Source: Styela clava (Eukaryota). Taken from it: DNA of 64,000 nucleotides. Below the pieces are notes generated by a model, which did not search any database, was not told where the DNA came from, and saw nothing but the letters and a program-made list of their open reading frames with translations. A program made the translations under genes and the position numbers. Positions 8,377-47,700 of the stretch are shown here, in pieces (within the stretch, counting starts at the first letter, position 1; each line of letters opens with the position of its first letter). The stretch spans positions 8,618,001 to 8,682,000 of the forward strand of contig NC_135264.1 in NCBI RefSeq assembly GCF_964204865.1, given 5' to 3'.

Positions 8377-8758
8377 ATGGAATCCACAAATTCAGAATAT
8401 GCAGCAAGTGCGGTAGACTACAAGGAGTTCGCAATAAAAGCTATGCATTCTCTAATTAACCGTCAACAAATCAAGCAATACACAAAATGCAAAACTGTCG
8501 AAGCGAATCGACACAGAGAATCAAGATATTTTGTAAATTGTCGTAAAAATTCTACGCTAAGAATTAACACATTCCCTAGGAGGACGAGCTTCATTAACTT
8601 TCCAAGTTGCATGAAATGGATCATTGTTACATCACAAACAACTCACTGGAACATGCGATTGATGAATATTTTGGCGGGAGTTATCTTCGTAACGTTATTT
8701 TGTGGATATTGTGTAACAGCCCAGGAATCGCTAGATTTTAGGAAGGATGTCAGACTGG
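8377..8758 (+). CDS. LAMA1/2: Laminin alpha candidate first exon A (signal peptide)
   Basis: [35 protein letters not shown] (ATG 8653; frame open from ATG 8377) ends at G|GTAAGT, phase 1. Joined to 25823 it gives [12 protein letters not shown], matching the vertebrate alpha1/2 N-terminus (..RGLFPA.LNLA). Confidence 0.75.
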
Positions 8759-20700: not shown

Positions 20701-23700
20701 AGGTTGGCTAGCATTCATGCCAATTTATAATAATTAACAACAAATCGTAAATTAAGCAAAATGGCAGACTGTTTTTTAATAAATTTCTTGCAAGAGATAA
20801 TCCAATTTCGTGGCCTATGTACTTCCATTTTCGCCTCGACTCGATGCTTACAATTCACCTCATAGTTCACAAAAATAGAATTTGTTCTTCCATTCAGATG
20901 TCACCACCTTACCATTACTTTTGCTTAAATATGCCGCGACGCGAATTCCTATTCAAAACTACCTTACGTAATGATTGTGGAATAAAATTCCATCCCATTA
21001 CGGAAGCTAACAAGTTAGAGCGAGGATTTAATTTTTCTTCCGTTTGGCCTAACCCAGCTATGTTGAGTTATTATAGTCAATAATAACTAATGTTGCGCAA
21101 ATAGGTTTGGTGTAAAGCCCTTGAACAAAAGCGGTCGCGTTAAAGTGGGGGATACGGATGTCGTGTAGTGAAAGGGCAAGCAACGACACTTGAAGATATT
21201 TCGCCCGATACTTGTCGCAAAACTTGAGAATAATTTCGTTAGCAGATGTGAAGGTACACAGCGATAGGGAAATTGAATCGCTCTTTATTTACCAAACATG
21301 AGCCAGAGATAAAATATAAATGATTTTCATGGCATCATAGTTGATCTTTGAAGTAATTATGATTTAGTAGTTCGAGTCTGGAAAGAAATAGCGAATGGAA
21401 TAGATATGTACTTAGCAATGAGAAACGTAATAATTACCTTCCCAATTTAAAACTGTTTCAGTTAGAAGCTTTTGTAATTTAATACAACGTAGCTGGTTAA
21501 TTTCTCATAAGTTTTTTAAAAATATTTTTTTGAGTAATTTGGCAATCAATTTGAGTCCTACATTCGACATCTTTCAAACTCTGGAATTGTCTCTAAAATT
21601 GTAAAAAAGGTGTATTTTACAAGTGCCTTACTTAATATGATCATAAATTTCAAATATCCTTCTGTTCTGAGTTTTTGTGAGTATTGGTATAGTATAGACA
21701 AGACGCCGATGAGAAATAGATCCAATAGCAGACATGAAAACGATAAAATTCGCCCAATTGTCATATGAAATGTCGTAGTAAGCGACAAAAAGTTGCTTTC
21801 GCGCACCCGATAAACGTTTTGTATTTTGCGGACAAAATGTGACATCTGAGGCCACGCTTATACATTACAAATGTCGATAAATTTAAAAATCTTGAAAGAT
21901 AACAGATTTCATAACTGTTGAGAATAACGTAAAAATTATTCGAAAATTGGGTCGGTGACTTCAGTAGCAAAATAACTATTTTGGATTGAGTATTTGATTC
22001 TAGTAATACTTTAATGTTACATGGTCATTGATGCTCTTAGGTTGCCAATCAAATTATAGTTCCAATAATATTTCCCACAATTACCTAGATCGTTTTCTGA
22101 TTAGTTTTCATACGAGTGTAAATTGAGGGTATGAGAGAGTGAATAAGATGCAGTTATGCTAAACTTCTACTACACGTCTTTCCCATTGCTTAGCGACTTG
22201 GGTAAATCTGGTAAACTAAATCCCATAACTCAAAGTAAATAAACAATCGAACAAGTTTAGTCTACTTTGTGTTTCTCTTTATCCGAGGTAAGCTTATAAT
22301 CTGCCAGGAAGGATCAACAAATTAACTCCAGATTTGGTATAGTGTCAAGTTTCGGAATTTTCATACATTCTTCCCATGTAGACCTATTTGGTTTGTTTGT
22401 ATGTTGGCATTGAAGGCCAAATTGATAACCGTTTCACATAAGAAAGTATTAAAAGGTTTTTATGATCTAAAAGAGAAGAATTGAAAAACGTGTTCAATGT
22501 GTTCAGAATTACAATGTCAGCGGTTTATTATGTTCAAGTAGTTGTCAGATTATGACTGGTTAAATTGTATGTTTCAGCCTTTTTTTCTGTTGAACTCCCT
22601 CCCTAAACTTAGGGCTGTAATTAGCCTTTTGTACCACAATTTTTCATATCTCTTCTAATATTTCAATATACCTACATCTGAGTTTGTTGCCTATTTAATT
22701 CGTGGTTCTGCTTTACAAATGTATAACCCCGTTGAACAGAAGTTATAAGTGCTTGTCTGTTCACTTCACCAAGTCTTTCACCACGCCTTTAAACGAGTAA
22801 CATAAATAAACATCAAATATAAATAATGTTCTTTCAATTCCTCTAGAAGTGTGTGCCTTAGTATGTCAAATGTGCCAAAGCTTAGAGTAAGAATTTGAAT
22901 TGTTACAAATGGCATACAATAACTCTTCAAGGATTTGCAAGAGAAGATTGTAAATTTTTGGCAACAGCTTTTTGTGTCATGACGTCACCAAAGTCTGTTA
23001 GCGTTTCTGAACAAGAGTCGGCATCGTGGTGCAGTGAACCTCAAAAGATGGCGGAAAACGTATCAATGCTGTCAGCGTCTGATGCGGTTATCGAGGACAA
23101 AATTTGTTCAGGCCTTTCAGATTTAAGTCAAGCGTGCCACGTGACCCCTTGTGCTTTTGAGCAAAGGAAACGATCAAACTTAGTTTCAAAGGTTTTTGAT
23201 GAAGGATTTACAAACTCCGACATTTTTGAGGATATCACTCATATGAAAACCGTCTTCAGAAAGACGCCCGCTTCATGTGAAATGCGACAAATGAGGAGAC
23301 ATTTAGCGACTCAATCCTCTTCTCACGTTACAAAAATATCTTCAAATTGTCCAAAAAGGCAATTTACTCAAATCAACGATAATTATATGAAAGAAACCTT
23401 AACGAACTCCAGTAGAAAATCTTTCGTCAGAACAATTCAACCATGCAACAGATTATGTACAAAGTGTCGTTCACGTCATTTTAGTCCTTTAAAAAACCTA
23501 TTTATTTATTCGGTTTTCGTCATTGTCATCTTCCTGGCACACCATCCTGTGTTGTCTGCTAAAACTCGGCATCTGAGGAAGCGACAGCGTGATACAGATT
23601 TAGGTGTAAACGAAATTATTATGCCTATGTTTCCGAATGCTGGATCTAATGAAGGTACAGTTTCAATGACATAGATTGTATTTAATCGTATAAAAACTAG

Positions 23701-26700
23701 GTGACAGTTACATACTAATTTCTTATTTTTTCACCACGTTTTGCGGAACAGTATCGGTGTATGCGTTCATTCTTCTAACCAATGTGGAAATAGGGCCCGT
23801 TCATGTTCAAATTTCTGAATATTTAACTGATTTCATTTGCATTGCTGTGTTATGGCCGGTTAATATGATTCTGATAGCAACTGATTTTTGAGGCCAAAGT
23901 ATGGTAACAGAGCATATGGTATACCAGCCAGTTTCCCACCCGTTTCCAAAACCATCCCCGACCTTTCATGAGCTTTATACTATTGTTACGTAGGAAGTAT
24001 TTCTGACACTTGGCAAATATCAGCCACTATATTTCAAGCAATATAATACTATAGGTCTGCCCACATTTTTTGAAAAAAAAGGTGTGTCTCCTTGTTTGCT
24101 TTTTATCAAAGGCGAATAAACCGACGATTAAATTGAGTGTTCCCACATTGTGTATCTGTTAACACCATCGCTTTCTTAAGAATGTTTATTTAAATAGTAA
24201 ATACACAACGGGAACATGGGTGAAGATTCAAAATTCGGCATAGGAATATTCCACCAACACTAATGAATTCTTCTAATAATTATATTAAAGCAGAATGCAT
24301 TACATTCACATGTATAAGAAAAATTCCGCATGCATTTAAATTACAAAAAAAGAATCTATTGAATAAACTTAAATTCCACATATTCGAGTTTCCTTCATGT
24401 GTACAATAAAAAATTAAAATTGCATAACATCGTAAACTCCTGCTGATGCACTCGGACGAATTCGATTAAGCATTTCCCAGTAAAAATTTTATTTTATTTT
24501 GTTCATCAGAAGACCATGAAGATTTTATACCAACTGCCTAGATTTAAAACGATAATTATGATCAAAACCGCGATTTTGTTAGTTGCATAATTAATTGATA
24601 AATGATGTCAAAATTTGTGTTACATTCAAGCAAAAAATTGACCTGTAAATATTACCTTCGTGTAACTGTTTATATGCGTATGAATTGAACCATTTTTCAA
24701 CATATCTTTGTTTGATTACGCTACATCAAGATATATTCAAAGTTAATCATTAACAATCTTGAAAAATCACAAATTTAGTGATATTTTCACGTATTTCAAA
24801 GCAGTATGATCATCGTTAAATCACTATTGGTAATGATTTCGCGAAGTTTTTACATTGTTCAGAGTTAAATACAGTGAAATTGCATTTAATCTGTCAAATT
24901 TTTAGTAGTAGATTATGATATCGTATTATTTTGATATTTGGTGTGACGTATAACAAACGTATCAAGTTTCTATTGCGGCTTACATGTATTACAATCGTAT
25001 AATCATTCGACACCAAACACGCCGCCGTGACCTCTAATTTTGCCAAAATTAGTTTTATTCAACAAAGCCAAATTTTATTATCCGTGACGTTGGTATACTT
25101 TGAAGTACCTTATTGTTAATGTTCGAGTAAAATTATATTAATATCACCCACATCACAATGAAAAAATTGATAACACCACAACAACTTGAACCTTGGTAGT
25201 CAAGGAAGCTCTGATGCGCAGTTGTATGACTTAAACAGACACGGGTGAGAAGGCGCGTGTCTGTGAACAATTTTAAGAGTTTGGCGTGTAAATAAATTTT
25301 AAACTAACCGGTATCATTAAACTAAATCTTTCATCGGAGTGTTAAGAAACATTAGTGAAATGATTTATACGCCGGGAAACAATTTATCGCATATTTCAGT
25401 TCTTAAATTTCATTGGAGAATATTATTCATACATGCTTTGATACTTCAAGGATATGGTTTCTTGAAAATGAGAATGAAACACGGGATAATGTGACACGAG
25501 CTATGTCAAATAAAGGGTTAGTGGTAAATTCCAATAAAATGAATAATAATATTAACAAGGGAGCGATGCTCAAATATTTGGACAAGAAGACCAAAACGAA
25601 ATAGTACGTTATGCAATATGGCACAGTAGACTACCGCCACAAGGTGCGCAATTTTTAATTTTAATGACGTCATCGAAAGACGATCGATTTGTAAATTTTG
25701 TGTTCCAAAATTTGTTTAATGCATATAGCATGTACTTCGAAACCAAGTTGAACTAACGACCCCAGCGTCTTCCAAATCCAACATTTTTGTTGCGAATATC
25801 ACTATATTTACATTGTTTACAGGTCTTTATCCGTCAATGGTGAACCTCGCCGCTCAAGCTCGTATAGTCGCAAATGCTACTTGTGGTGAAAATGGCCCAG
25901 AACAATTTTGTAAGCTGGTAGAACATGTTCATCGGATATCAAGACGACGACGGAAACGGAGTCAATGTGACGTGAGTGTTGCAAATACTAGTGGCGTTAG
26001 TGTACAGATCAGTCTTTAAAAATCCCAATATTTATGGCGCATATAGTCTACCGATGATGTTTCTCCGACCCTTGACCTCAGAGAATTCCTCCTTATACTT
26101 TACTATTACAAAATTTCGGATGCTCATAATGCGAGTGTTCTGGAGCTTACAAATTAGTTTACATGTTCATAACTATCATTTTTATTGAAAACATTCATCC
26201 ATGTGTCGCTTGCAGGTACTGATAATAATTTTAGCCTATAGTCTATCGCAGTTTTTGATTATTGTACGTAAACTGGAGCTCTTCGAAAGACTATAGTGGC
26301 CTTTAGGTTATTTCATTTATAACTAATTTTCGGAAACACTACTGAAAATTGACAAATAACACACAAAACCACTAAAAGGAGGCTACGTTTACAACCATGC
26401 TTGGGTATCTGTATGAGGGAAAGAAGTGTCTAAGCGGCTGCACAAATTGCAATTGTTACGTCATTGTTGACTTATTGCTGTTTGGTAATTGTTACGGAAA
26501 TAAACAGGTAAACCAATTCTAGGAGAAACGTTCATAGTATCGTAACGAGCCGATGAATTCTCATGGATGTATTCATTTCATCTCCTTGGGTCTATACATC
26601 TCTTACCAATGAGCACCCTTTCCGTGATTCTATTCCCAGCTTTCAGACATTCTAGTTGTTATTCCCGGTTTATGCAACTGATGGGAAATTGACTAGATTA

Positions 26701-29700
26701 GATATTTCTAACAACTTTTCATTTTGTGAAAATAGATTGAATGGGGGAATTAACTTCTAAAAAATTACTGTTCCACATTATCCTTTCTCAGATATGTTCT
26801 TCACATCCTCATCAAAGTCACGATATCGAATATGCAATCGATGGTAGAGGAAGTCGTTGGTGGCAAAGTCCTACTATAAGTAGTGGATACGAATACCATT
26901 GGGTGACAATTACATTGGATTTGAAACAAGTATGTTCTATTTTTCTAACTTTCTTCAACACTTTATCGACTGATAAGTTTCCCCCTTATTTTGCTAGGAT
27001 TGATAATACCAATCGGCCATCGCAGGGTACCAACTGTAGTCTGTTCTTTGCAGTTATCATGGTCGCACTGGAATAGAGAAATAAAATTAATTGCTCGCGC
27101 CTTTATAGAGTATTTCCATGTGCTTTGCGTGTGATTTAGTCATATCCTCAAGAAACAAAATTACTTTTTGCGACATGTTTTATGAGATTATTTCGCTGTT
27201 TGTTTTCATACTCGAAAATCGTCTTAGTCTAGACAAGGAGTACTTGACAATTACGACGTTCATAATAAAGCTGTAGGTCATAACTTGTTATTTTGTTGTG
27301 TTTCATTCACCAACTAAATAAACGCAAATTTGTGAAAAACGCATGAAATATGTTGGTAAGCTTGCGTGATGCAATGTAGATAATGAAATGCACTATCTGT
27401 ATGGCATCATAGCACCTGATTTTTGCAAACAAGTAAGAACAGATTACATCAAGTCAAAATTGAACATCTGAAAATTAAGTTCTCAGTTAGATGAATATAT
27501 ATTTTCCAAATGCCATTTTATTGATTTCCTAATAGACATTGAGTGAAAGTACTGCTACTACACAAGTTACTAAAACTCTCAATGGATAAATATATACATT
27601 TAAGCCAATATTCCGTTTGTACCAGATAGGGGGATATCGTATTGCTCTTCCCATAGTGAACCAAGCTGGATTAATAGGAAAAATCATTTATATCAGTGAC
27701 TCTAATATTGCGATACAACATCGTCCTAAATAAAACCAGCAGAACAAGAACCATTGCAAATGTTGAATTTTTTTATCGTTCATTAAATGCCTTTCTTATC
27801 AGATAAGTTGGCTCGTTGTTTTCATACTTTCAACACAATAACATACGCCCACTTGCGTCTGAGTAGGACCCAACCAGCTGTGCGCGTGATTAATTTTTAC
27901 CACACTGCCGACGTCTGAAAAAACACGAGCTTGCATGGTTACTTTATTAATTTTTTACAAAATAAAATACAGAGATCTATCTAGTTTACGTACTTCCTTA
28001 GGTATGTGGAACTGTCGATGTATCCTTATCAAATCAACTTCACTTGAACGTAAACATTTCGTCATTCTTTCAAATATATAAGTACACTCCCAACATGCAT
28101 TTTATGTATTTGTTTTTATTATTATTCTAAATATTTTCGTTTATCATCGGCGCTTGCTTCTAACTTACCTTAGGCAATGGCATAGTCTTGACCACAAATG
28201 GAATTAGGGTCAATTTCAATTCCACGTTTATGACGTCGACATTTACTTCGCATGCAATGTGTCCATGGTTTGTTGTTGTTCTCACCTAAAGTGTTTAAAA
28301 ACTGTTACGATCTTGTTAAATTCATTTTTCAGTGATGTAATCTTGACTTCTTTTATAACAAAAACGCATAAATTTTACACGAATTTTGTAGTAACTAGAA
28401 AGTTATAATTGACAGGCTCAAATTCTATTCAAATATATATTTGGGAGTTCAAATCTACTGGTGGTTATTATTATAAATGTATAAATCGAATTTATCTCTC
28501 TAATAATTTTTTTGGGTATAAATCATCGCAATATGCTGAAAATTAAGATTCACATGGAAAATATAACATTCAAACTCCACAAAAAAATCATGAATAAAAA
28601 AAAACATTTTCTTCATTTTCTGTTTTTAGAGAAAATTTATTGAAAATTATAAACATGCTAGTTTTTGCTTGAACCTTTGTCATATGTACTACGCACTTTT
28701 TTTTTTATATACGACGTATTTATAAAGAACTCGCTCTGAACTAGGCTCCACATAATCAGCCACTGCTGGGTGAGTAGCTACAAGAAATGGAATCTTACCG
28801 GTGGTGGGCATGGGATTTGAACTCAAACTTTCAACCTGCGACGCCATCGCCTGATAGGTTCAACGCTTAAACCATTGCGCCGCGACCATTGCGTGAATTT
28901 ATGTAAAACAGCTTAATTCTTCCAATTTTCCAATAGTTCATTTTTTAATTTGATTTAATTTATTTTTAATAGGACAAAATAATGCGCCAAATTTCTATAT
29001 AGATCACATGTAATATGTCGTGTGCCTCTGCTTGATAATTGACTGAATTTTATCTGATGCCAAAATATATTTTCGTTTCAAAGGATTCATGTAGTACATC
29101 AAGAGGTCAGACGCATTTAAAAGATGCTATTCAAATTTACATTTACAAATTAAATTTGGCCAAGGATAGAAATAGATAATATTTTCTTTCTAATTGTGTG
29201 TTAGTTATGAATCACACTTGGTCGACTATGATAAAACAATCACCGATATTCAACCTAATGCTATCTATTATCGCCTCATTCGCGCCACAAATGCCATTAC
29301 CGTGTTTCTATTCTGTTTTGAAGAAGCATTTAAATTTGTTGGGGTGAGCAGATGTACTCACTTTATCATAAAACACTTTTATCCACTACTATATATCATT
29401 TACGCCTGGAACGGATCTATTTTTAAGACTGTCGCGTGAGTAATAAACATAGGACTCGTCGCCTTCAAAGGCGTCTCGTGCGAGTGACGTCATAGTCTGG
29501 CGACGCGGTCGCCGTGAACGACACAAATTAGCCCGCAAAGCTTGTGTTTCTATAATCACGCAGCGATTTGGTTATTGGCTTCAACGTTCAAAGATATCGC
29601 ATAAAATTAGGACAAATTTATCCAAAATTTGCGATTATCAAGAATATCGTTTTCGAATTTGTTTTATATTTACTGACAACGTTTCAAATTTTAAATGAAT

Positions 29701-32700: not shown

Positions 32701-35700
32701 TGCGCCCTTTTTTTGCGGGTGTTCGGCGGAGTCCAGTGTTTGGCTTAAGACGTATATCCGTTGCGGTTATAATGAAGTATTTCTGATATTGCAACTACGA
32801 TTACCTTCCATTAATATTTCCGCTCATTTTAACAGTATTCATTTTTAGCCACCCTCGAGATTAAAGTTAGCCAATAACCAATATTGACTTAATGGGTCTC
32901 CCGCTAACACAGTAATATCCTTATTAAATTCGAAAAAGTCAATGATCTCTCACTGGTTAATCCGCTTAGCTACGGTGCTACACTAAATCCATTCAAAGTA
33001 TATTAATAACAGCGCTGTTGGATCGCGTGGCGATTTTTAATAATGCAATATTAATTTGCTGGGTTGGCGGTACCGCATAGGATGCTGTATTGCCATTCGA
33101 TTCATTTCCGCACAAAATAGCTAGGTCCGGGTAGAAATGGGAATGGATATATTGTCACCATTCGCGAAGGATTTAATATTCAATGCGCTGTCAGATAAAC
33201 AGCATGTTAATATTTTTAATTTTTTTAAAGATTGACAAATCGTATTGTAATTGGCAATCGTGCATGCATTGTTTCCATTGAAATCGCCAGTTCATACGTT
33301 AGCTCTCTATAAAACTTGTTTTGTGCTGAATCAGAATAAACCAAATTGATATTTTGATTGGAAGTTGTCTGTATATTCATAAGCAACATCTTACTCTTAG
33401 TTTTTGTCCAGGTACAGCCGGATTTATTTGGGTTTTCAGTATCTCAAAACGTTAATGAAATAACCAAGCAATGAAAAAGCCTAAATTCACATAGTTTTAT
33501 AGCTACAAAAAACACCAGTTGATTTACGATTTGAAGTATTTGTGTTCAATTGTGTGTGAAACGCTCTAAACATTTTTAATGTAGCAATTTTAATTGCCAG
33601 ATGCTCAATTTTAAAATATATTTTCTTTTACTCTGAATCATCAAATATTTTAATGAAACTGTTGTATCTTCAAATATTCCAATTTCCAGATAAAAATCCC
33701 CTTTAAATTTCAAATAACTTAACATTTATCCCATTAATTTCTATTCGAGTCATTACATAATTGCTAACTTCCGATTTTCTGGGCTTTTCCAGGTCATTGT
33801 AGAGTCACATCAGCTTTATAAAAATAAAATAAATTTTATAGCGCATTCGTGCCGAGTGACGATTTTACTAGAGCACGTTCAGTGATCGTTAACTCGATGC
33901 ATCGATAGTCGATTTGATTTACTGCCTACATTTTCTTTGATCATTCACCTAATCTGTGATCGTAAATCGAACGACTAGACTGAACAAGACGGATTTTGAT
34001 AGATCCAACGACTTAATATGCCAGCCGTGGGCCGCGAGTTGGTCGGATTAAATGCAGATAAATAAGAACCGTCATATAAAATATTTTGGTATAAGCTTAT
34101 TACAGGCAAAATTTTGAAATTGATGAAGTAGAATGGACTTCAAGTTCCGTGAACGTGGCTGTTTCTATAATATTCTCATAAATATGAATGCCAATAATAC
34201 ACCTTTCAATTGAAATTAAAGACTTGCCATCTTTTATAATTACATATCAAAAGTCATGAATTGCAGTACTTGAGGCGATTTTGGTGTGAAATTTCGACGT
34301 CATATCGAAAACGCATTTTTCCTTGGTATGAGGAATTGTTTTTTTACTTCTGCGAGACCAACAGCGTTTGTCTAAATTGAAAATTTTGCGTTCCTAGTCT
34401 CACTACAAGACTTGCATGTCTCATGTCTATTATATCATTAATTAGTAAAATTTATAGGAGCAAAACTTCGCTTTAATTTCCATATTTCGTTATTACTTCT
34501 TATAGGTCTTCCAAGTGGCGTACTTCATTTTCAAAGCGGGTAATTCACCAAGACCAGGAAATTGGATTCTAGAAAAATCTCTCGATGGCATCACATGGCA
34601 AGCGTGGCAGTACTTTGCTGTCACGGATAGCGAATGTAGACATCGTTATCCAGCTCGAGTCACAAGAATGGGGTCACCAAAGTTTCGTTATGACAATGAA
34701 GTCGTCTGCACTTCTTTCTTTTCGCAATTATTGCCACTTCAAAATGGAGAGGTGAGTGAATATTAAATGTTTCGCATATTTTTAATTAACCATTTCGGCA
34801 TTTCCCCCTCTCTCTCTTGTCAGCGTTCCCTCATTTTCATTATTTCGTCCCTATTGCATTTCCCACCTTTTCTCTCTTCTCCAGTTCTCACGTTTTCCCA
34901 CCATTTTCATGCAAATCCATCAACTTTGCCTGAATTTAGATTCACATATCAATGATAAATGGGAGACCAAGTGCAGAGAACCCTTCTGACGAATTAATAA
35001 AGTTTACTTCCGCTCGTTACGTTAGACTTCGATTCCAGAAGATACGAACTCTCCATGCTGATCTTATGACAATCTCTGGCCAACCGGCAGAGTACGTGGA
35101 CCAGTCAGTGACGCAACGGGTAAGTCGACTTGTCAGTATACTTATCAAAACACCCACACAATTTCAAATATACCCAAATCGGAACCCGAGATTGTAACAC
35201 GTCTACATTTACACTTATTTTTCAATTTAAGATCAAACACGATACAACGGTGTAATATTGCACCTGAAATGTGCTCGAGGGGAGGGGTCAATTGACTTTC
35301 CTAGCGACCATTGTCAAGCTTTCTCTGTAATCCGTAATTTGAGGAAAATTGGCGACATCAAATACGGTTGACCGCTGATTTCCGCTCGTGGCAGGGAATA
35401 GACTCATATTAGTTAAATTGTTAATATCAAACATGGTATACACCAAGGAAGTGTATATAGACTACATCTATTTGTTCTGTATATCCTGATAGCAAGTGTC
35501 TATTTATGTTACAAACAAAACATTCCCAGATTAACCTAAACTCTTGAATGATCGTGACAATATCACTTATAAAATATATATATTATTTAATAATACTTAT
35601 CTATGATCTATATCCGATATTGTTATAGATATCTCCGATATCAATTTGTTATGACTAGTTAACTAGATTACAATTCAGATTATATTCAAGGGCTACTAGA

Positions 35701-38700: not shown

Positions 38701-41700
38701 TGATTCACATACCCCAGCGACGAGCTATCATATATCGAAGCTCAAAAAACGTGTTTGCGAGTTGCAAACACATATTTTAAAATTCGTCCAGCAAATAGAC
38801 TGTGTGACTTGTTTGGGATTTTTCCATACAACCTCTTATTCGTCATATTGAATATTGTACACCTAAATTGCATTTTCCCGCGTCATAAACTTTATAAGGC
38901 GTCGGTATCAGTTCTGTTATGTACGAAGTCTCTAATCCGCTTTCCAGTCGAGGCTATCATTATCCAAAATTAGCCACTGAACACACTGGGCAACAATTGT
39001 TATGACCAAGTAAAAATCGTAATTATTATTAGTCGCTTACTAAAGATCCAGTGTTCGTGTACAGGTGTTTCCGGCAGCTGAAGTATTTCACGAAAGAGTG
39101 TCACTAAGCAAGCACTAATTGTAAATATATCTCAAATTAACAAAATTTTCAAAACGACAAATCCGTGAGACAATAACGTTACCTTTGGCAGCATTGTGCT
39201 GTCGATGGACCTTTGGTACAGAAAGTTAAACCAATTTGTGAATTTGTTTTTGTTTTTTATAATTTTTTGTCAAGTATTCTCTTGCTGTATTAGTATTACA
39301 GGTATGATTATATGTAGGAAATAGTTTATTACAACTTTACAAATTCCTTCATTAATCCCTTTAGCGTATTACGGTGTATAGGACTAAAGAAACGTGGTAC
39401 GCGGCCCAAACCCCTAATTACTACACACGTAGTATAATTGACAACGTTTTCTTTGGGGTCGCATAATAAATTCGTGTGGGGTCTCTTTCTTGCTTAATAA
39501 TAAAAATATTAATAATTTCATGGCCAAATTTGAAAACATCGTATAAATTTCACAATGGTAGTAACAGTAGATTACTTCGCACGTGATTGATTTTGACATC
39601 ACGTGATTTTTGCTGATGACATTGCATCGCTTTGATTTATTGTCCATTGACCTAAATTAATGATTTTTACGAGACGAGTCAAATTTCGACAATAGGTAAT
39701 TACACGATGTTACTCTAATTCAAATAATTCTTTCGATCTGACTTGCGATTCAATTTAAAGTTAACCGTAAATCAACGCCATTTTTTATTTATATATTAAG
39801 GGCGCAAAGGAGATTTCTTGGAGATCGGGTAATTTAGAGATTCTGGGTCGTTTGATTTCTTTTGAATATCCATCATTGTTGTTTATATTTGTCAATTAGC
39901 ATGAGTTACCGTTTCTGTTTCAATTTTTCAAAAAATTCGTATTTAAGTTATTTTGTGCATATTTGGCTCTTCTTCGAGGACTAATTTATGAGGAAGCACA
40001 CCGTGGCCTAATTTTCCTTCCTCTACCTCTTGAGGTATATATATATATTCTTGCGAGCTTTCCAAGCTAGTCATTGAAACAGATGTAGAGATTCTGCGTT
40101 CGGAATCGATCAATCACGTTCTAGAATAGGTGGACAATTGGAAACAATATTTTACCCTTATTTGTGACAAATTGCTATTGTTTAGCGAAATGCCTCAAAT
40201 AGGAAACGGTCGTCACCTTACATTTTCATTTTTATGTTAAATTTAACCAGACTAAATGTAACTCATTTCCGACATTTTATTTTTGTAGGGGTACACAATT
40301 ACTTTTTCGCTGTCGTAGTAGACAATGCGACGTCACAGCGGCGCAAGACTATTAACAATAGCAAAACCCGGCTATTTGTTACGTCACAAATAAAATATAA
40401 AAAAGTGTGTCGCCTTCCCATTGTCTTGTCGCACACCCCATTCGGGTTAATGAAGGAATAACCCGCTTGGATCTCCTCTTGTTTTTAACTGATCGTAAAA
40501 AGTCATTAACGTTTCGTAATTATCGGTTTGCGTTCATAAAGATAGCTACTTGATAGCGGAAAAGCTACTAGAATCGTACATGTGTGGGCCATTGATAGTC
40601 GATGTGATGTACGCACGATACGTAATTAGTTCATGGTTGATAAAGGGTAATATTTACTTAGAGAAAATGAGATTGCCGAAAATGGCTGACTTTCGTCGTC
40701 CGAAGAAATAACCGCCGCTTTTACCAATTATATCATTTTATATCTGAGCGATTTTCAGATTTAGTCGCCCGTAATTTCGGCTTCACTAAGCGAGAGACCG
40801 ACTAGACAGAGATATATGGTTATTATGCGAGTGGTTTAGCTACCGGTACGTTTGTAGATAAATTATTTTAACATTTAATTCAGTTTTCAGAAGTGGAAAT
40901 AAAGCGACAAATTATACCACAATATAAAAGGAATGAATTAGATAAATGAGTGCGGTGATAATTGCGTTTCATTTCCAAGCGTTTTGTTGTTCTAAGTCCA
41001 GTGTAATTTTGATTCTCAAGTTAGTGGGAGACGCTGCAGTTTAATTTCGCGATCTTGTTAGCAGTACAGTACCTGCTGATCAGGGGAAGATATGATTAAA
41101 GGCGTGAAGTATATTATATGAATTGGGAAGTTAGTGACAATATTGTTTTTATATGTTTTTAGCTATAGCTGATTTACCAGGGTTATAAATACTTATTTTC
41201 AAGTATATTACGCTGTAGACTAGGGAAAATTTATTTCGATGTTAAACTAAGAGCATTTCAAATGCACGCGTGTAGAGAAGCAACATTATTGCTGCATGGT
41301 TTTGACTTATGTTATCGGCTTCTAGACCAAATACAAATTTGATTCAGTCGTATTTTACGTAGTAAAATTCATGAATATGAATTCGAGGTTTTATTGCTTA
41401 TACTTTTTAGTTGGATATGTACAGCTATCTTGATTGACAAGTTTTAGAATTTGTTAAAATAATTTGTAAAATTGGAATTGCGATGTAAGAAATTTTAATA
41501 GTTTCAAAACTTTGAATTACTTCGCTATAGCGTTTACTGTGTATATTATGGTGTGATTCTGTGCTCGAACACAAACTCATGCTGCGATTGGTCCCTTTCC
41601 TCGATGACGCTAAAACAAGAAAATCCGACTACTTATCCAGATTAAATCATTTAATCCGTTTAATCTGACTAATCGGCAGCAAAACATGACTGACTTTGAC

Positions 41701-44700
41701 AGCGAAACTCCTCTGAAATGTGATTTTACAATTCCACACCCGTGTTTCCTATGTTTATTATTGTTACAAGTACACCTCGGTATGATGTAAAATTATTTAT
41801 ATAGTGTGCCGTATTGCCACTACACAGTATATTCTCTGTTCATTTCTTAGTTTGGAATTTACATTGACGTTTCAAAAACCTAACTAGTTGAAGAGAATTT
41901 TACATAAAAAATTGATGTTTTATTTGACTTACATCTTACGTTAGTATCGTGAAATTTACTCTTCGGCGCTTGTTTTTTGTTTGTTTACATATTTATTTAT
42001 TTGTGTCTGTATTTATTTTATGTACACTATAATGGTTTTGCATTTTAAATTGGAGACCTGGTGTGGTAGTGTTGTGGGTTAGTGAGCGACGTAACTCGGT
42101 ATAACAAAGTATGTAATTATTATGTGCCTGAAAATTGAAGGGGTATTAGATAATATTACAATGAAATTTCAATTTATTCAAATTTTAAGAGTAGAACCAT
42201 AATTTTTCGTTTTTTCTCCAGTCTTTATTTTTTCCATGAATAAATTAAAAAAACGTATTAAGTAACCACAATCATTTAGATGATATTTCATATATCATTA
42301 TTGGAACGAAACCACATTTGATAAAATCATAGCATATAAATATACTTTGCGGACAACCATTATTGTCGGTCTATCAGAAACCCCCACTTTGTGACGTAAA
42401 ATGTAAAATTAAGAGGACATTAGAAGATTAATTACTTCTCTAATCCGTGTGAACGAAACATAAACCACAATTGTCGACCGACCTTTTTACGACCCAATTT
42501 GTATTTTCTTTTAGTAATTACTGAAAAAATCGGAAAAATATAAAAATCGAATATTAGAGTGGACCACGTCAGGGCAATACGCTAGGATTGTTTGTGTTCG
42601 GAAAAGAATATTTTGTAGCGTAATCCCTGTTCTCTATAATTCGAGACATTTAATTGCGAAAAAAATTTTCTTCGATTAATGACAGCCAAAGATAATATAA
42701 TAAAGAGTTTCTTAAAACTTCTTTTGAAGAAAGTTAATTGGCGCTACCTCAATTTCCATTGTGAATTCTAGAATCTAGATTAATTCAACTTCAAATAAAC
42801 ACTGTTCTATTTAACGTTTTCAGTCAGTTTAAACCTTTATTTAAAGCATGGAACCATAGTGAACATACTTATCTGATATCAGGAGACGGATTAAATAAAT
42901 ACAAAGGTTTTCATCAACTATAGTTTACGTCATAAGTTGGTGGCGTCATTAGCCAAGATGGATTGTATCATTGGACATACTTTCGGTATCATATGCTGGA
43001 TTCTATGGGCATATATATGCAATTGTACTTTCGGTATGCCGGCGTATAATAGCCAAAAGCATTACGTATCTCGGAGAAATTGGCATGCTCCTCCAGCTCG
43101 GTCATCTTATTATCGTATGGAGCATGACTATGGCCTCAGAAGGCGCTACGATTACGCTGCTTTGAGAGCTGTTTTACCTTCTCCTGGCTATGAGAAATTT
43201 GATATATATCCATATTCCACTTCACATCGGGTGTTATCTAGCAGAGATAAGTACCGGTATACCCCTACTTGGTATCCTATGCAAGACAGACTGATGCTGG
43301 CTAAAAACGTGTGTCCTTGTGGCGTTCGGGATAAACTTGACAATCTTCATGTAAGTTTTGTATTGTTACGTCATAAATATCAAGCATTGATGATGATCTA
43401 TGACCTATCTATGCCAGTATGCGTTACGTGGCCCTACTCTCTCCAAAGTTGCAAGCTTTTGCCGTTTTGTAAAAAATTTTTGTTTATTTTCAAAATGTCG
43501 TGTGAAAATCTGCACGAATTCACAGACGGCAAACGTGTAATTGTATCATTTTAGTTAAATCCGTACGGAAGCTGGTATTTAGAATAGGAACAATGCCTCA
43601 TAGACGAACCTGCTAAATTTACGGTTAGCCCGTCAATTACAAGCCAAGTTGTCTTATGGTTGTAATTATTTCCTTCTAGTGAAATGATGACCATATTTAA
43701 TACCACACAACATATATAATGTTAAAATCAATGGCATTTCTCCCGTGTTAAAGCATGGACAAATAAATTCAAGTCGTTTTTGAAGTTTAATCGGCCAAAA
43801 ACGAGCACATTTTGATAAAAGAGGAATTGAGCGACAACAGGGTTAATTTTGTCCATCTCTTCATAAGTCGACAGGAAGTGTTAGGTTTTTAATCCGTAAA
43901 TCATCGGTGTTTTGATTCCGGATCAGCGGATCTTTAAACACAGGTTTACCGCGTTTGGTTGTGGTCCTGTCTGGTTTTGCGCCATGAATGAAGGTGCCGA
44001 ATGTAAATTTGTATTAGGCTAGTGAAAATTATATGTGGTTTTGAATATGATATATTGAAATAGGAGTGACAGTGGGCATTCAAATTTTTTCAATACTAAT
44101 CCCAAAAGATGGTTTGATTGTTATATCAGTTGATATGGTAGGTCAAAGCAAGATTTGTCTAAAAATAATACCAATCTAATGTCAAATTTGTTCAACATAT
44201 TGTACCAAATAGCAGTCGACCCTGAACCCACCAAAAGGTAATTCGTTGAACATACTCGAGACATTCTATACGTAAAACCTGCTATATTTCTAAAATATAT
44301 AAATGTATATACGCACGCAATTATGTACATTTGCTTACTACATAGAATCAAAAACAAACAAACTACGTCATGAGAATTTTTATCCGGCAACCTTTAAATC
44401 TAATTAAAGATACACAAACATATAATTACCAACCGACTTTTGACGCCCAAAGGTTGTCGTCTGCTGGAGTCTTTTTGTTACTTTGAAACATCTGCAATTT
44501 TTAATTATCATGGTCGCGTGCTAAAATAAGATGATCTTTCAAGTTTGTCGCGTAATTATCAGTCTTAAGTGTTTTATCTTATTACCAACGAGTTATTATT
44601 TGTTTATCTATGTTTAATCATGATATGTTTAAAAAGATGCTAGAATTTTTAAAGGTAAAATATTTGCTCTTTCCTATACATTGCAAAAATTATGACAACT

Positions 44701-47700
44701 TTCATCATTTACACACTATTAAAGTATGAATAGATGTATGGTCCCGATGGACATCCGATTGGGGGCATTGGGTTGCCATATAGACGGCGTTTGTATTTCA
44801 GGGCAGTTCCACAAAGTAGTACACTCCCAATTCAGTGTGGGGTTATGTTTTAGACTTGTTCCTATCAAATCTCACAGTTTTCCAATGGTGGCCCTTTCTA
44901 CAAAAGATTCTCCGAATATATCCAGCCTAAATGAAAATAGATTTACATTGACATATAAAGAAGTTGTATGAATTTATTTCTATGATATGCTATATGAATC
45001 ATTGGGCTCACTTCCTCAGAGTGGCTATAACGACTACTCAGGGCATTGGATATGACCGATTATTATTAGTTGATCATTGGTAACTGTTAAATTTGCTTTT
45101 TTACAGTATTTCTATTCCGTGAAAGACATCAGTATCGGCGGGATGTGTATCTGCTACGGACATGCACACGATTGCCCGTCTCACGCAACAACAGGAGTAT
45201 GTACTATTATAAATTTTTTCTCATCAAACTTTTTTTTTTAAATTCCAACAAGCCAAACCAAAATACTACGCGATATGTTTCTTGTCCACGTTCAAAAAAT
45301 TTGATCTTTTTCAGAAGTTCATTTGCAAATGTGAGCATAACGCGATGGGTGATAATTGTGAGCAATGTAGACCGAAATTCAACCAGTACAAGTGGAGCCC
45401 AGGGAATGGTGGATTTCAATGTGAAGGTAAGGCTGCGTACACTGGTAATTCGGCGGTTGCCACATTTGTAACGAATTCAAAATCTTTGAAAATTTTTGAA
45501 TGATTGCAAATTCTTTTCTATTATCTCAGAATGTAATTGCAACGGGCATGCCGATTCTTGTTATTACGATGAAAACGTTGAGTGGCGAAAAGAAAGTATA
45601 AATATGGAAGGGCAGAGAAAGGGCGGAGGAGTATGCATCGATTGCCAGGATCACACAGCGGGCATCAATTGTGATAGGTATCTTCGATTATTTTTCATTC
45701 AAATATTTAAGTCCGCGCTTAAACCAATTATGAACCACGAATGATAAACGATGGACCACACTTGGTAAAGCTTGTAACTTATACCCAAATACATATATGT
45801 ACAGAGAAGTGTTTATTTTTTAGTTGTGTTGATGGATATTTCCGACCTATCAATGTACCACCAGAAGATGTGCGACCATGCAGACCATGCGATTGCGATA
45901 CCTACGGTGCTCGCACAAATTTCAATGGTCGACAAATGTGCAGAAAAACGACGGAAGATGGCGGTGCACATCAAGGAATGCAACCCGGGGACTGTTACTG
46001 CAAGGACGGCTACGCGGGTTCAAAATGCGAGCGGTACGATTTTTATTGACTTGTTATTAATATGATTAATATAATATTATTAACATAATTTTATTCGACA
46101 GATGTGACTTCGGTTTTCGTGGATATCCTCGTTGCGAACCTTGTCAATGTAATCCTGCTGGAAGCTTGAATATGGATCCTTGCCATGGACCATGTTTGTG
46201 CAAGGTAAGAAATGTGTATTTTACATCAATTGTATACTACAATTGAAAAATGTTACAAAACTGTTACTACTACACTATTATTTTACAAAATTCAGGAAAA
46301 CGTGATAGGACCAAAATGTGACGAATGCAAAAATGGATATTTCAACCTGGAGCGTCAATCTCCGCTTGGATGTGAGACGTGTTATTGTTCTGGGATTACC
46401 AATCTTTGCGAATCCGCTGTGCTGTACAGGTAAATAAATGAACTTTCATCATGCTGGAATGCTTATATACTAATGGTATATCTTTCTACTATTCGTTTTA
46501 ATATTTTACATTACCCAGTGGTTACTCCCGTAGTATGTGTATATGGTTAGTGTTGGGCCATAATTTTATTCCGATTTTCCTTATTTCAGTTCTATTACAA
46601 GTTCGAGGACTGTCTGTTTTAGCCAAGTAAATATACCCCCTGCCCATAGGTTTCAGTCCCTTTACACAACTTGATTAGTTACCCTATTAATATTAATATT
46701 GCCCAGTCGTTACTCCCGTAGTATGTGTATATGGTTAGGGTTGGGCCATAATTTTATTCCGATTTTCCTTATTTCAGTTCTATTACAAGTTCGGGGACTG
46801 TCTGTTTTAGCCAAGTAAATATACCCCCTGCCCATAGGTTTCAGTCCCTTTACACAACTTGATTAGTTACCCTATTAATATTAATATTGCCCAGTCGTTA
46901 CTCCCGTAGTATGTGTATATATATGGTTAGGGTTGGGCCATAATTTTATTCCGATTTTCCTTATTTCAGTTCTATTACAAGTTCGGGGACTGTCTTTTTT
47001 AGCCAAGTAAATATACCTCCTGCCCATAGGTTTCAGTCCCTTTACACAACTTGATTAGTTACCCCCAAATAGGTACACTTACTTCAGAAGTGCTGTTCAG
47101 TCAAACTTTAGCTTGAACATCTTGCTTATAGTTGAAGAAATTTCACAGGCGACATTTTGATTAACCAACATTTAAAACTGCTTGTTTTGAGCCATGTTTG
47201 AAGCTGTCAGCTAACTAAACTTTCGTTCTAGGAGATACATTCGAAACATGCGTGGCTGGGAAGTTGTAGACAGACCAGCATCACACACTACCATCCCATC
47301 TTATGACGAAAATTTGAACGAACCATATGTTTCACACGAAGAAACAGCTCGTGCTGTATGCACTGGATTATATTTTTGGAAACCTCCCAATGAATACATA
47401 GGTATGTTTGAAAATAAAAAACATTGATACTTTTGACATTATATCAATTATCAAACAATTTCGTAACGTTTTTTTCCAGGCAACAAGTTATCTTCTTATG
47501 GAGGAGAATTGAGATATACTATTTATTACGAGTTACCTACCAATAGTACTCAGTCATCTCCGATCAAAGATATTGATGTTATTTTGGAGGTAAGTCTTGT
47601 GACTGTTTTATGATTTAGATTATGCCTAAATATGATATTGAACTTTTCATATTTTGTTCAGGGTAATGGAATATCTTTGGAATTTAGTCGCCAAAGAGAA

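What the first reader, a model, noticed from the sequence alone, without database searches (positions are those of the whole stretch)
42958..43356. Exon D: internal leader replacing LN with a novel Tyr/Arg-rich peptide
Seen: excellent start context, a signal peptide of about 26 aa, and about 105 aa rich in Y/R/P/S with RR and RRR sites and a CPC motif. A perfect GTAAGT donor is in phase with the next laminin exon. Known: alpha chains lacking LN (alpha3A, alpha4) cannot polymerise into networks. Inference: an LN-less alpha1/2 isoform with a lineage-specific head, in which the Tyr-rich part might serve cross-linking or adhesion or be processed at the basic sites. An alternative is the first exon of a nested secreted-peptide gene.
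Basis: partly seen in the sequence, partly recalled or inferred. Interest (0 to 1): 0.78.

Follow-up and report, generated by a model that had tools for sequence, protein, structure and literature searches.

The report
Laminin isoform without its polymerising head
Inside an intron of this animal's laminin alpha gene lies a second starting exon, seen spliced to the next laminin exon in RNA, that swaps the network-forming LN head for a new tyrosine- and arginine-rich peptide.

Summary
ATG 42958 opens 131 codons that end at a GTAAGT donor (43351). This lies in the 10-kb intron between the last-but-one LN exon (ends 35116) and the exon that carries the last LN strand plus the start of LEa1 (45107).

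Assembled RNA contigs of 3 of 4 runs (one study) carry the exact joint 43350>45107, GT..AG, phase 0. The fourth run covers the exon without the joint. No other acceptor and no intron retention were seen.

The peptide is single-copy. It has no Pfam family, no PDB relative and no real relative among 1.84 billion representatives. It evolves fast: 6 nonsynonymous to 3 synonymous differences, against 1 to 7 in the neighbouring LE exons.

My reading is an alternative first exon, LAMA3A-like in logic. It would give an alpha1/2-type chain without LN, hence a non-polymerising laminin with a lineage-specific head.

Four things are not shown: the transcription start, continuity to the end of the laminin mRNA, translation and secretion (the signal-like segment has an atypical charge pattern), and any role of the Tyr/Arg-rich head. 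Other species' genomes could not be searched.

The parts
42823..42957 (+). 5' leader of exon D as far as RNA contigs reach (contig starts at 42823, 42839, 42864 and 42864). It contains a 3-codon upstream ORF at 42848-42859.
   Evidence: table 8 (records 1, 9, 5, 7). for the upstream ATG. Contigs cannot show a true transcription start.
42958..43035 (+). Start codon plus a 26-codon hydrophobic, signal-like segment ([26 protein letters not shown]).
   Evidence: Kyte-Doolittle is 2.32 over 11 residues. A small residue sits at -1 (G) and at -3 (T). The charge pattern is atypical. No signal-peptide predictor was on hand.
43036..43350 (+). 105-codon Tyr/Arg/Pro/Ser-rich head with no family, fast-evolving.
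   Evidence: Searches found no relatives. Searches give 6 nonsynonymous to 3 synonymous differences in RNA contigs, with the frame kept in all of them.
43351..45106 (+). Intron removed in RNA (1756 bases, GTAAGT...ACAG).
   Evidence: table 5: joint 43350>45107 in contigs of X2, X3 (side 30) and X4 (side 57).
45107..45196 (+). Common exon: last LN strand (13 residues) and the start of LEa1. It is the acceptor shared by exon D and by the ordinary LN exon.
   Evidence: aligns to laminin alpha-1 8DMK residues 237-260, E 2.1e-10; downstream contigs of X2 and X3 begin exactly at 45107, as expected at a branch of the assembly graph.
34940..35116 (+). Ordinary last-but-one LN exon, the alternative upstream partner of 45107. 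It ends in phase 0 before GTAAGT.
   Evidence: 8DMK alpha-1 residues 177-234, E 8.8e-18.. X4 record 10 fits it.
34506..34750 (+). LN exon skipped by the exon D form (3' end approximate).
   Evidence: Laminin_N, E 2.3e-19, profile 92-169 of 233.
25823..25963 (+). First LN exon (GLYPSMVNL...), skipped by the exon D form (3' end approximate).
   Evidence: Laminin_N profile 2-49 of 233. for the acceptor.
26789..26932 (+). Second LN exon, skipped by the exon D form (ends approximate).
   Evidence: Laminin_N profile 42-95 of 233..
8653..8758 (+). Ordinary leader exon with a classical signal peptide ([24 protein letters not shown]...), phase 1, fitting the acceptor at 25823.
   Evidence: Read from sequence only; no RNA was laid here.
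45315..46427 (+). Downstream LEa exons joined in RNA: 45315-45424, 45528-45674, 45821-46032, 46101-46202 and 46294-46427, then 47230 onward.
   Evidence: tables 5 and 8 (all 4 runs). for the frame.

Best explanation
Exon D is a used alternative 5' exon of a laminin alpha1/2-type gene. Transcripts that begin at or upstream of 42823, most likely from a promoter inside the 10-kb intron, carry their own ATG (42958). They splice 43350>45107 in phase 0 into the exon that holds the last LN strand and the start of LEa1.

The predicted product starts with a hydrophobic, signal-like segment of about 26 residues. A 105-residue Tyr/Arg-rich head follows, probably unstructured. After it comes the whole rest of the alpha chain (LEa, L4, LEb, coiled coil, LG).

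The alpha LN domain is one of the three LN domains needed for every node of the laminin polymer. A heterotrimer with this chain therefore could not polymerise. It would act as a non-polymerising, receptor-binding laminin, or would dilute the polymer, as laminin-411 and laminin-3A32 do in vertebrates.

Shown here: the exon, its open frame, the joint in RNA, and the absence of relatives.

Inferred: a separate promoter, continuity to the 3' end of the laminin mRNA, translation, secretion, loss of polymerisation, and any role of the head.
For: RNA:
- The joint 43350>45107 (GT..AG) is in contigs of 3 of 4 runs.
- Record lengths (517 = 487 + 30; 569 = 512 + 57) leave no letters between the two sides.
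- All four runs cover exon D.
- There is no other joint from 43350, and depth is zero from 43470 to 44257.
- Downstream contigs of X2 and X3 start exactly at 45107. In X4 a second contig (record 10, 472 letters) enters 45107 from elsewhere. This fits two upstream partners.
- Word depth of exon D contigs against the downstream laminin contig is 3.7/8.2, 19.4/36.4, 14.1/42.8 and 6.4/14.2. This is a rough measure only.

Frame:
- Both exon D and the ordinary exon ending at 35116 stop in phase 0.
- The chance of 130 open codons after an ATG is about 6e-5.
- The 219-codon open frame is expected 8e-4 times per window.
- All RNA haplotypes keep the frame, with no insertions, deletions or stops (tables 3 and 4).

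Domain map:
- Laminin_N covers the exons at 25.8, 26.8, 34.5 and 34.9 kb.
- 8DMK alpha-1 residues 177-234 and 237-260 flank the joint.

Copy number: single copy and no retrocopy.

Literature:
- LAMA3 uses alternative promoters for the short alpha3A and the long alpha3B (PMC8388930, one passage).
- Laminins with truncated alpha short arms do not polymerise (PMC11260871, passages).
Against: - Within-species differences in exon D (6 nonsynonymous, 3 synonymous; pN/pS 0.54) do not differ from neutral expectation (binomial p 0.30). The neighbouring LE exons show 1 to 7 (pN/pS 0.035); Fisher p 0.05 between the two.
- Codon usage is only in the top 3% of stop-free non-coding ORFs (8 of 263).
- The signal-like segment has a negative n-region and +3 just after the core. 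By the recalled positive-inside rule this is the wrong way round for a cleaved signal.
- No relative was found anywhere, so there is no evidence of conservation.
- All RNA evidence comes from one study. It consists of assembled contigs, not reads, and the runs are only guessed to be RNA, although the spliced joints argue for RNA.
- Contigs bridge only 30-57 bases beyond the joint, so continuity into the full laminin mRNA is inferred.
- No start site was measured.
Confidence: 0.6

Rival explanations
1. The exon is transcribed but functionally idle. A young intronic promoter fires and the strong donor finds the next acceptor. The open frame is a recent accident or a decaying remnant, and little or no protein is made or secreted.
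For: - pN/pS of 0.54 is not distinguishable from neutral.
- There are no relatives.
- Codon usage is only modestly coding-like.
- The charge pattern of the signal-like segment is atypical.
- An upstream ATG with a 3-codon ORF lies in the leader.
- The open frame runs 67 codons past the donor with non-coding-like codon usage, as a remnant might.
Against: - Several conditions are met together: an ATG in good context, 131 open codons (about 6e-5), a hydrophobic start exactly where a secreted chain needs one, and a phase that matches the laminin frame.
- The frame is intact in every RNA haplotype seen.
- Word depth is a third to a half of that of the common laminin exons in 4 of 4 samples (rough).
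Confidence: 0.2
2. The product is made, but the hydrophobic start is an uncleaved anchor. The chain would then be membrane-tethered, or wrongly oriented, rather than secreted.
For: - The hydrophobic stretch spans about 19-23 residues (Kyte-Doolittle 1.85 over 19).
- The charges around it are reversed.
- Earlier unchecked notes of this scan propose membrane-anchored laminins elsewhere in this genome.
Against: - The ordinary leader, a classical signal, scores even higher on the same measure (2.16 over 19), so hydrophobicity does not discriminate.
- G at -1 and T at -3 before residue 27 fit a cleavage site (the rule is recalled).
- With positive charges after the core, an anchor would place the laminin body in the cytosol, which makes no biological sense.
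Confidence: 0.1
3. Exon D is not a first exon. It is either an internal cassette exon joined to upstream LN exons, which would then meet stop codons before 42958, or the target of spliced-leader trans-splicing of the long pre-mRNA. In either case no separate promoter exists.
For: - Two cag acceptor-like sites behind a short pyrimidine run lie at 42821-42827.
- Contigs cannot show transcription starts.
- If the genome is a tunicate's (an unchecked note), trans-splicing is common there (recalled).
Against: - The four contigs end at 42823, 42839, 42864 and 42864 with no joint and no loose letters (table 8). Record lengths are fully accounted for, and one contig reaches the G of the first cag.
- No joint into 42.8 kb is listed, although 100 loose ends were not shown.
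Confidence: 0.07
4. Exon D is the first exon of a separate, nested gene for a small secreted peptide, as the reader offered as its alternative.
For: The open frame continues 67 codons past the donor to a stop at 43552.
Against: - The only joint from 43350 goes to the laminin exon, in frame.
- Depth in bin 43273-43469 equals what coverage up to 43350 alone would give, and it is zero beyond.
- The post-donor part has non-coding-like codon usage.
Confidence: 0.03

Closest known systems
Vertebrate LAMA3: short alpha3A from an internal promoter, long alpha3B from the upstream promoter
   Same: One gene gives a full-length chain with LN and a chain without LN by choice of first exon (PMC8388930, passage). 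The short form makes non-polymerising laminins (PMC11260871, passages). That alpha3A's own first exon lies in an intron and encodes its own signal peptide is recalled, not read here.
   Different: Alpha3A drops most of the short arm. Here only the LN domain, less its last 13 residues, is dropped, and all LE and L4 domains stay. In their place comes a 105-residue head. No sequence relation exists: exon D has no relatives. The gene type differs too, as the best PDB match here is alpha-1.
Laminin alpha4 (laminin-411), a chain that naturally lacks LN
   Same: The alpha chain has no LN, so no polymerisation (PMC11260871, passages).
   Different: Alpha4 is a separate gene with a very short arm, not an isoform, and it has no Tyr/Arg-rich head.
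Lama2 dy2J mouse allele (defective LN domain)
   Same: An alpha1/2-type chain whose LN is defective while the rest of the chain is kept. It shows what loss of alpha LN does (named in PMC11260871 passages; details recalled).
   Different: dy2J is a disease mutation. Here the LN-less form is a normal, abundant-looking transcript beside the full form.
LaNt (laminin N-terminus) proteins
   Same: An isoform of a laminin alpha gene that separates the LN function from the rest of the chain (PMC9788559, search listing and abstract start only).
   Different: It is the mirror image. LaNt keeps LN and a few LE domains and loses the rest. Exon D loses LN and keeps the rest.
Tyr/DOPA- and Lys/Arg-rich adhesive or cross-linked matrix proteins (mussel foot proteins, ascidian DOPA proteins)
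   Same: Composition only: 12% Tyr and 12% Arg in a secreted-looking, low-complexity segment.
   Different: The resemblance is recalled, not tested. There is no sequence relation, no repeats, and no evidence of modification.

Membership tests
Alternative-first-exon, LN-less laminin alpha isoform (LAMA3A-type arrangement) | The isoform-specific exon lies within an intron of the full-length transcription unit. | tested here: met
   Exon D (42823-43350) lies between the LN exon ending at 35116 and the exon at 45107.
Alternative-first-exon, LN-less laminin alpha isoform (LAMA3A-type arrangement) | The exon is spliced in frame to common downstream exons. | tested here: met
   The joint 43350>45107 is in contigs of 3 of 4 runs. 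Phase is 0 on both sides.
Alternative-first-exon, LN-less laminin alpha isoform (LAMA3A-type arrangement) | It has its own start codon and secretion signal. | tested here: inconclusive
   An ATG in good context and a hydrophobic core are present. The n-region is negative and +3 follows the core. No signal-peptide predictor or experiment was available.
Alternative-first-exon, LN-less laminin alpha isoform (LAMA3A-type arrangement) | It has its own promoter and transcription start. | not testable with these tools
   Contigs end at 42823-42864 without an upstream joint, but contigs cannot show a start. No CAGE or raw reads were available.
Alternative-first-exon, LN-less laminin alpha isoform (LAMA3A-type arrangement) | The product lacks the LN domain. 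| tested here: met
   The skipped exons carry Laminin_N profile positions 2-214 of 233. Only 13 LN residues remain.
Alternative-first-exon, LN-less laminin alpha isoform (LAMA3A-type arrangement) | Common descent with the vertebrate alpha3A-specific exon. | tested here: not met
   No relative of the 131 residues was found in 1.84 billion representatives. The 2 hits are spurious repeat matches. The word search was also blank. So it works like alpha3A but is not the same exon.
Laminin alpha1/2-type chain (the host gene) | LN, LE, L4 and coiled-coil domains in laminin order. | tested here: met
   - Laminin_N x4 (three of the four above Pfam's gathering score; the 34940 exon, 20.9 bits, is under the 25.9 cut-off), Laminin_B and EGF_laminin.
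- Laminin_I at 25.0 bits, under the cut-off of 34.6.
- Best solved relative is laminin alpha-1.
- LG domains were not confirmed: 63181-63456 gave no family.
- The alpha1/2 assignment against alpha5 was not tested by a tree.
Independent nested gene for a secreted peptide | A transcript that ends on its own, not joined to host exons. | tested here: not met
   The only joint from the donor goes to the laminin exon, and there is no depth past 43350.
Transposon-derived exon or promoter | Further copies elsewhere in the genome. | tested here: not met
   The protein search gave self plus 2 chance-level matches, E 0.96 and 1.2. The 1301-base DNA search gave self only.

The most novel reading that the evidence does not exclude
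This animal may have reached, on its own path, what vertebrates do with alpha4 and alpha3A. Its lineage may have only two laminin alpha genes (recalled for tunicates; the species is unverified). It would switch a polymerising alpha1/2 laminin into a non-polymerising one from an intronic promoter.

The new Tyr/Arg-rich head would not be mere filler. It would replace LN-LN polymerisation with another mode of assembly, such as cation-pi self-association or peroxidase/DOPA-type tyrosine cross-linking to other matrix. That would amount to a second, chemically different way to build a laminin network.
Probability: 0.1. Interest if true: 0.8.

Novelty: new variant of a known kind. Interest (0 to 1): 0.58.

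Why it matters
[quoted passage not shown] Vertebrates tune network density by mixing in LN-less chains from separate genes (alpha4) or from an internal promoter (alpha3A).

An invertebrate alpha1/2-type gene that makes both a polymerising and an LN-less chain would show that this tuning can arise independently within one gene. The LN-less transcript here also looks far from rare. Such a gene would offer a natural 'dy2J-like' chain to study in a simple animal.

It would also be a clean case of a young, orphan coding exon grafted onto one of the most conserved matrix proteins. The four literature searches I ran found no paper describing such an isoform. Public gene models may already list it; I could not see them.

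Tried and rejected
Searches that gave nothing on exon D:
- Pfam on the 131-residue peptide and on the 219-residue open frame: nothing at E up to 1.
- Word-index protein search: 12 candidates, none scored. That tool sees only proteins of 72-229 residues for this query, so it says nothing of full-length chains.
- Full HMMER search of 1.84 billion representatives: 2 hits. I read both. They are receptor-type tyrosine phosphatases with many fibronectin-type repeats. The matches are short 'SSYYR'-like strings counted 9 and 5 times, so I rejected them as relatives.
- PDB by sequence: best E 0.8, rejected.
- Own genome by protein and by DNA: self only, plus two chance-level matches that I did not follow (L002, L003).

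Disorder of the head is therefore my inference from composition.
- The promoter scan on hand is for bacterial sigma-70 sites and says nothing here.

Checks whose strength I had to correct:
- My first codon-usage null (random intronic windows, z 4.65) was too easy, because stop codons dominate it. I replaced it by stop-free non-coding ORFs (z 1.79, 8 of 263) and report both.
- A TATA-like TATTTAA lies at 42808-42814, but one contig starts only 9 bases after it. I draw nothing from it.

Readings I rejected:
- A furin-processing reading: there is no R-x-x-R.
- A transposon origin.
- A nested gene.

Things I could not do:
- Search other animals' genomes or transcriptomes for the exon.
- Verify the species. 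'Styela clava' comes from an earlier unchecked note.
- See supplements of papers. None bears on the claim as far as I can tell.

The spliced model (exon D joined to the laminin exons) was sent to no search. Exon D and the laminin exons were searched apart.
Full report
WHAT IS THERE. The window (no N, about 35% G+C) carries a laminin alpha gene on the + strand. Its LN domain is split over five exons:
- about 25.8 kb, Laminin_N profile positions 2-49 of 233;
- about 26.8 kb, positions 42-95;
- 34.5 kb, positions 92-169, E 2.3e-19;
- 34940-35116, positions 169-214, which aligns to residues 177-234 of laminin alpha-1 in PDB 8DMK, E 8.8e-18;
- a last piece at 45107-45196, which aligns to residues 237-260 of the same chain, E 2.1e-10.

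LE, L4 and coiled-coil exons follow. The ordinary leader is at 8653-8758. It has a classical signal peptide and a phase-1 donor that fits the acceptor at 25823 (sequence only).

The finding sits in the 10-kb intron between 35116 and 45107.

The ATG at 42958 (gccaagATGg) opens 131 codons that end at 43350 before GTAAGT. Exon D and the ordinary exon ending at 35116 both stop in phase 0, and 45107 starts in phase 0.
- The stop-free run is 219 codons (42895-43551). About 8e-4 such runs are expected in the window.
- The first 26 residues are hydrophobic.
- The other 105 hold 13 Tyr and 13 Arg, with RR, RRR and C-P-C as described.

THE KEY TEST. Twelve runs were listed for 42600-45300. Four runs of one study (X1-X4, guessed to be RNA) hold 11-17% of its words. 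That is about the share that exon D and the 90-base common exon make up.

I laid their assembled contigs on 41500-47400.
- In X2, X3 and X4 a contig runs from 42864, 42864 and 42839 to 43350 and continues at 45107 for 30, 30 and 57 bases. This is a GT..AG joint that skips 1756 bases.
- The record lengths (517 = 487 + 30; 569 = 512 + 57) leave nothing between the two sides.
- X1 covers exon D in two pieces without the joint.
- The same runs carry six further GT..AG joints of the laminin exons, so they hold spliced RNA.
- No other joint leaves 43350, and depth is zero from 43470 to 44257.
- The joined form is not a retrocopy. Exon D and its flanks occur once in the 377-Mb assembly.
- The downstream contigs of X2 and X3 begin exactly at 45107. 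In X4 a second contig (record 10) enters 45107 from sequence outside the laid stretch. This is what an assembly graph shows when two upstream exons share one acceptor. That the other partner is 35116 is my inference.
- Word depth of the exon D contigs is about a third to a half of that of the common exons: 3.7/8.2, 19.4/36.4, 14.1/42.8 and 6.4/14.2. The tool warns that this is a poor measure. I take from it only that the form is not rare in these samples.

WHAT THE PEPTIDE IS. It belongs to no known family.
- Pfam found nothing and PDB nothing.
- The word search was blank.
- The exhaustive search of 1.84 billion representatives gave two hits. On reading them they are repeat-driven chance matches to receptor tyrosine phosphatases.

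The RNA contigs differ from the genome at 9 coding places in exon D, 6 nonsynonymous and 3 synonymous (pN/pS 0.54). This cannot be told from neutral (p 0.30). The LE exons 45107-46427 have 1 nonsynonymous and 7 synonymous (0.035); Fisher p between the two is 0.05. No haplotype breaks the frame (tables 3, 4).

Codon usage favours frame 0, but against stop-free non-coding ORFs it is only in the top 3% (8 of 263). The head is thus young or weakly constrained, as disordered leaders often are. Its coding status rests on the ATG, the long open frame, the hydrophobic start and the matching phase taken together.

DOUBTS ABOUT SECRETION.
- The core is hydrophobic enough (2.32 over 11 residues, against 2.85 for the ordinary leader).
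- G at -1 and T at -3 fit cleavage after residue 26 (rule recalled).
- However, the n-region has net charge -1 and the 15 residues after the core carry +3. That is unusual for a cleaved signal.
- There is no R-x-x-R motif and no N-glycosylation site.
- A 3-codon upstream ORF lies in the leader.

HOW IT MOST LIKELY WORKS. An internal start, with its own ATG and signal-like segment, is spliced in frame to the LN/LEa1 boundary exon. The alpha chain keeps every domain except LN. The alpha LN is required for each alpha-beta-gamma node, and laminins with truncated alpha short arms do not polymerise (PMC11260871, passages). Trimers with this chain should therefore bind receptors and partners but not polymerise, or should thin the polymer when mixed with the full form.

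The nearest known arrangement is LAMA3, whose alternative promoters give the short alpha3A and the long alpha3B (PMC8388930, one passage). It works like that, but it is not the same exon or the same gene type.

The head's role in cross-linking, adhesion or processing is untested.

LIMITS.
- The evidence is one study, contigs rather than reads, and only 30-57 bases past the joint.
- No start site was measured, and tissue and stage are unknown.
- No other species could be searched.
- The species name (Styela clava, from an earlier unchecked note) is not verified here.
- The joined exon D-laminin model was sent to no search; the exons were searched apart.
- Four literature searches listed no paper on an LN-less alpha1/2 isoform of this kind. 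I saw their listings only, apart from the two papers named above.

VERDICT. It is a new variant of a known kind, an LN-less laminin alpha made by choice of first exon. Confidence in the full protein-level reading is moderate (0.6). Interest is 0.58.

Noticed in passing
window 46425-47212: The intron between 46427 and 47230 holds a repeated element whose words reach depths of thousands in all four RNA-like runs. Most laid contigs (744 of 813 in X1) fit two places of the stretch, with many internal joints. It is likely a highly expressed or very abundant repeat family.
   Followed up: no
window 25931-25963: The first LN exon carries a polybasic insert, [11 protein letters not shown], just before the conserved Q-C-D. 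This is a furin-type site inside the LN domain of the ordinary isoform. If used, it would be another way to disable polymerisation.
   Followed up: no
window 43351-43551: The reading frame of exon D stays open for 67 more codons past the donor (chance about 0.7%). Its codon usage there is non-coding-like, and no RNA covers it. It may be a remnant of a longer ancestral ORF or chance.
   Followed up: partly
window 44258-44651: In run X1 only, contigs lie inside the exon D-45107 intron (for example 44407-44649, depth 3.7). This may be unspliced precursor or a small unannotated transcript.
   Followed up: no
window 22886-23671: The longest open frame of the window (262 codons, + strand) has no Pfam family. 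It lies upstream of the first LN exon and is the subject of another note of this scan (s1-825913).
   Followed up: no
window about 41894-41913: One contig of X3 (depth 13) matches up to 41913 and then runs on for 255 unlike letters (table 7). This may be a repeat edge or an exon of something else.
   Followed up: no
window 45315-45317: The aligner placed the exon start at 45318 with 'AAA' between the two sides. The acceptor cag ends at 45314, and the RNA has A where the genome has G at 45317 (a synonymous Lys change). The exon is therefore 45315-45424.
   Followed up: yes
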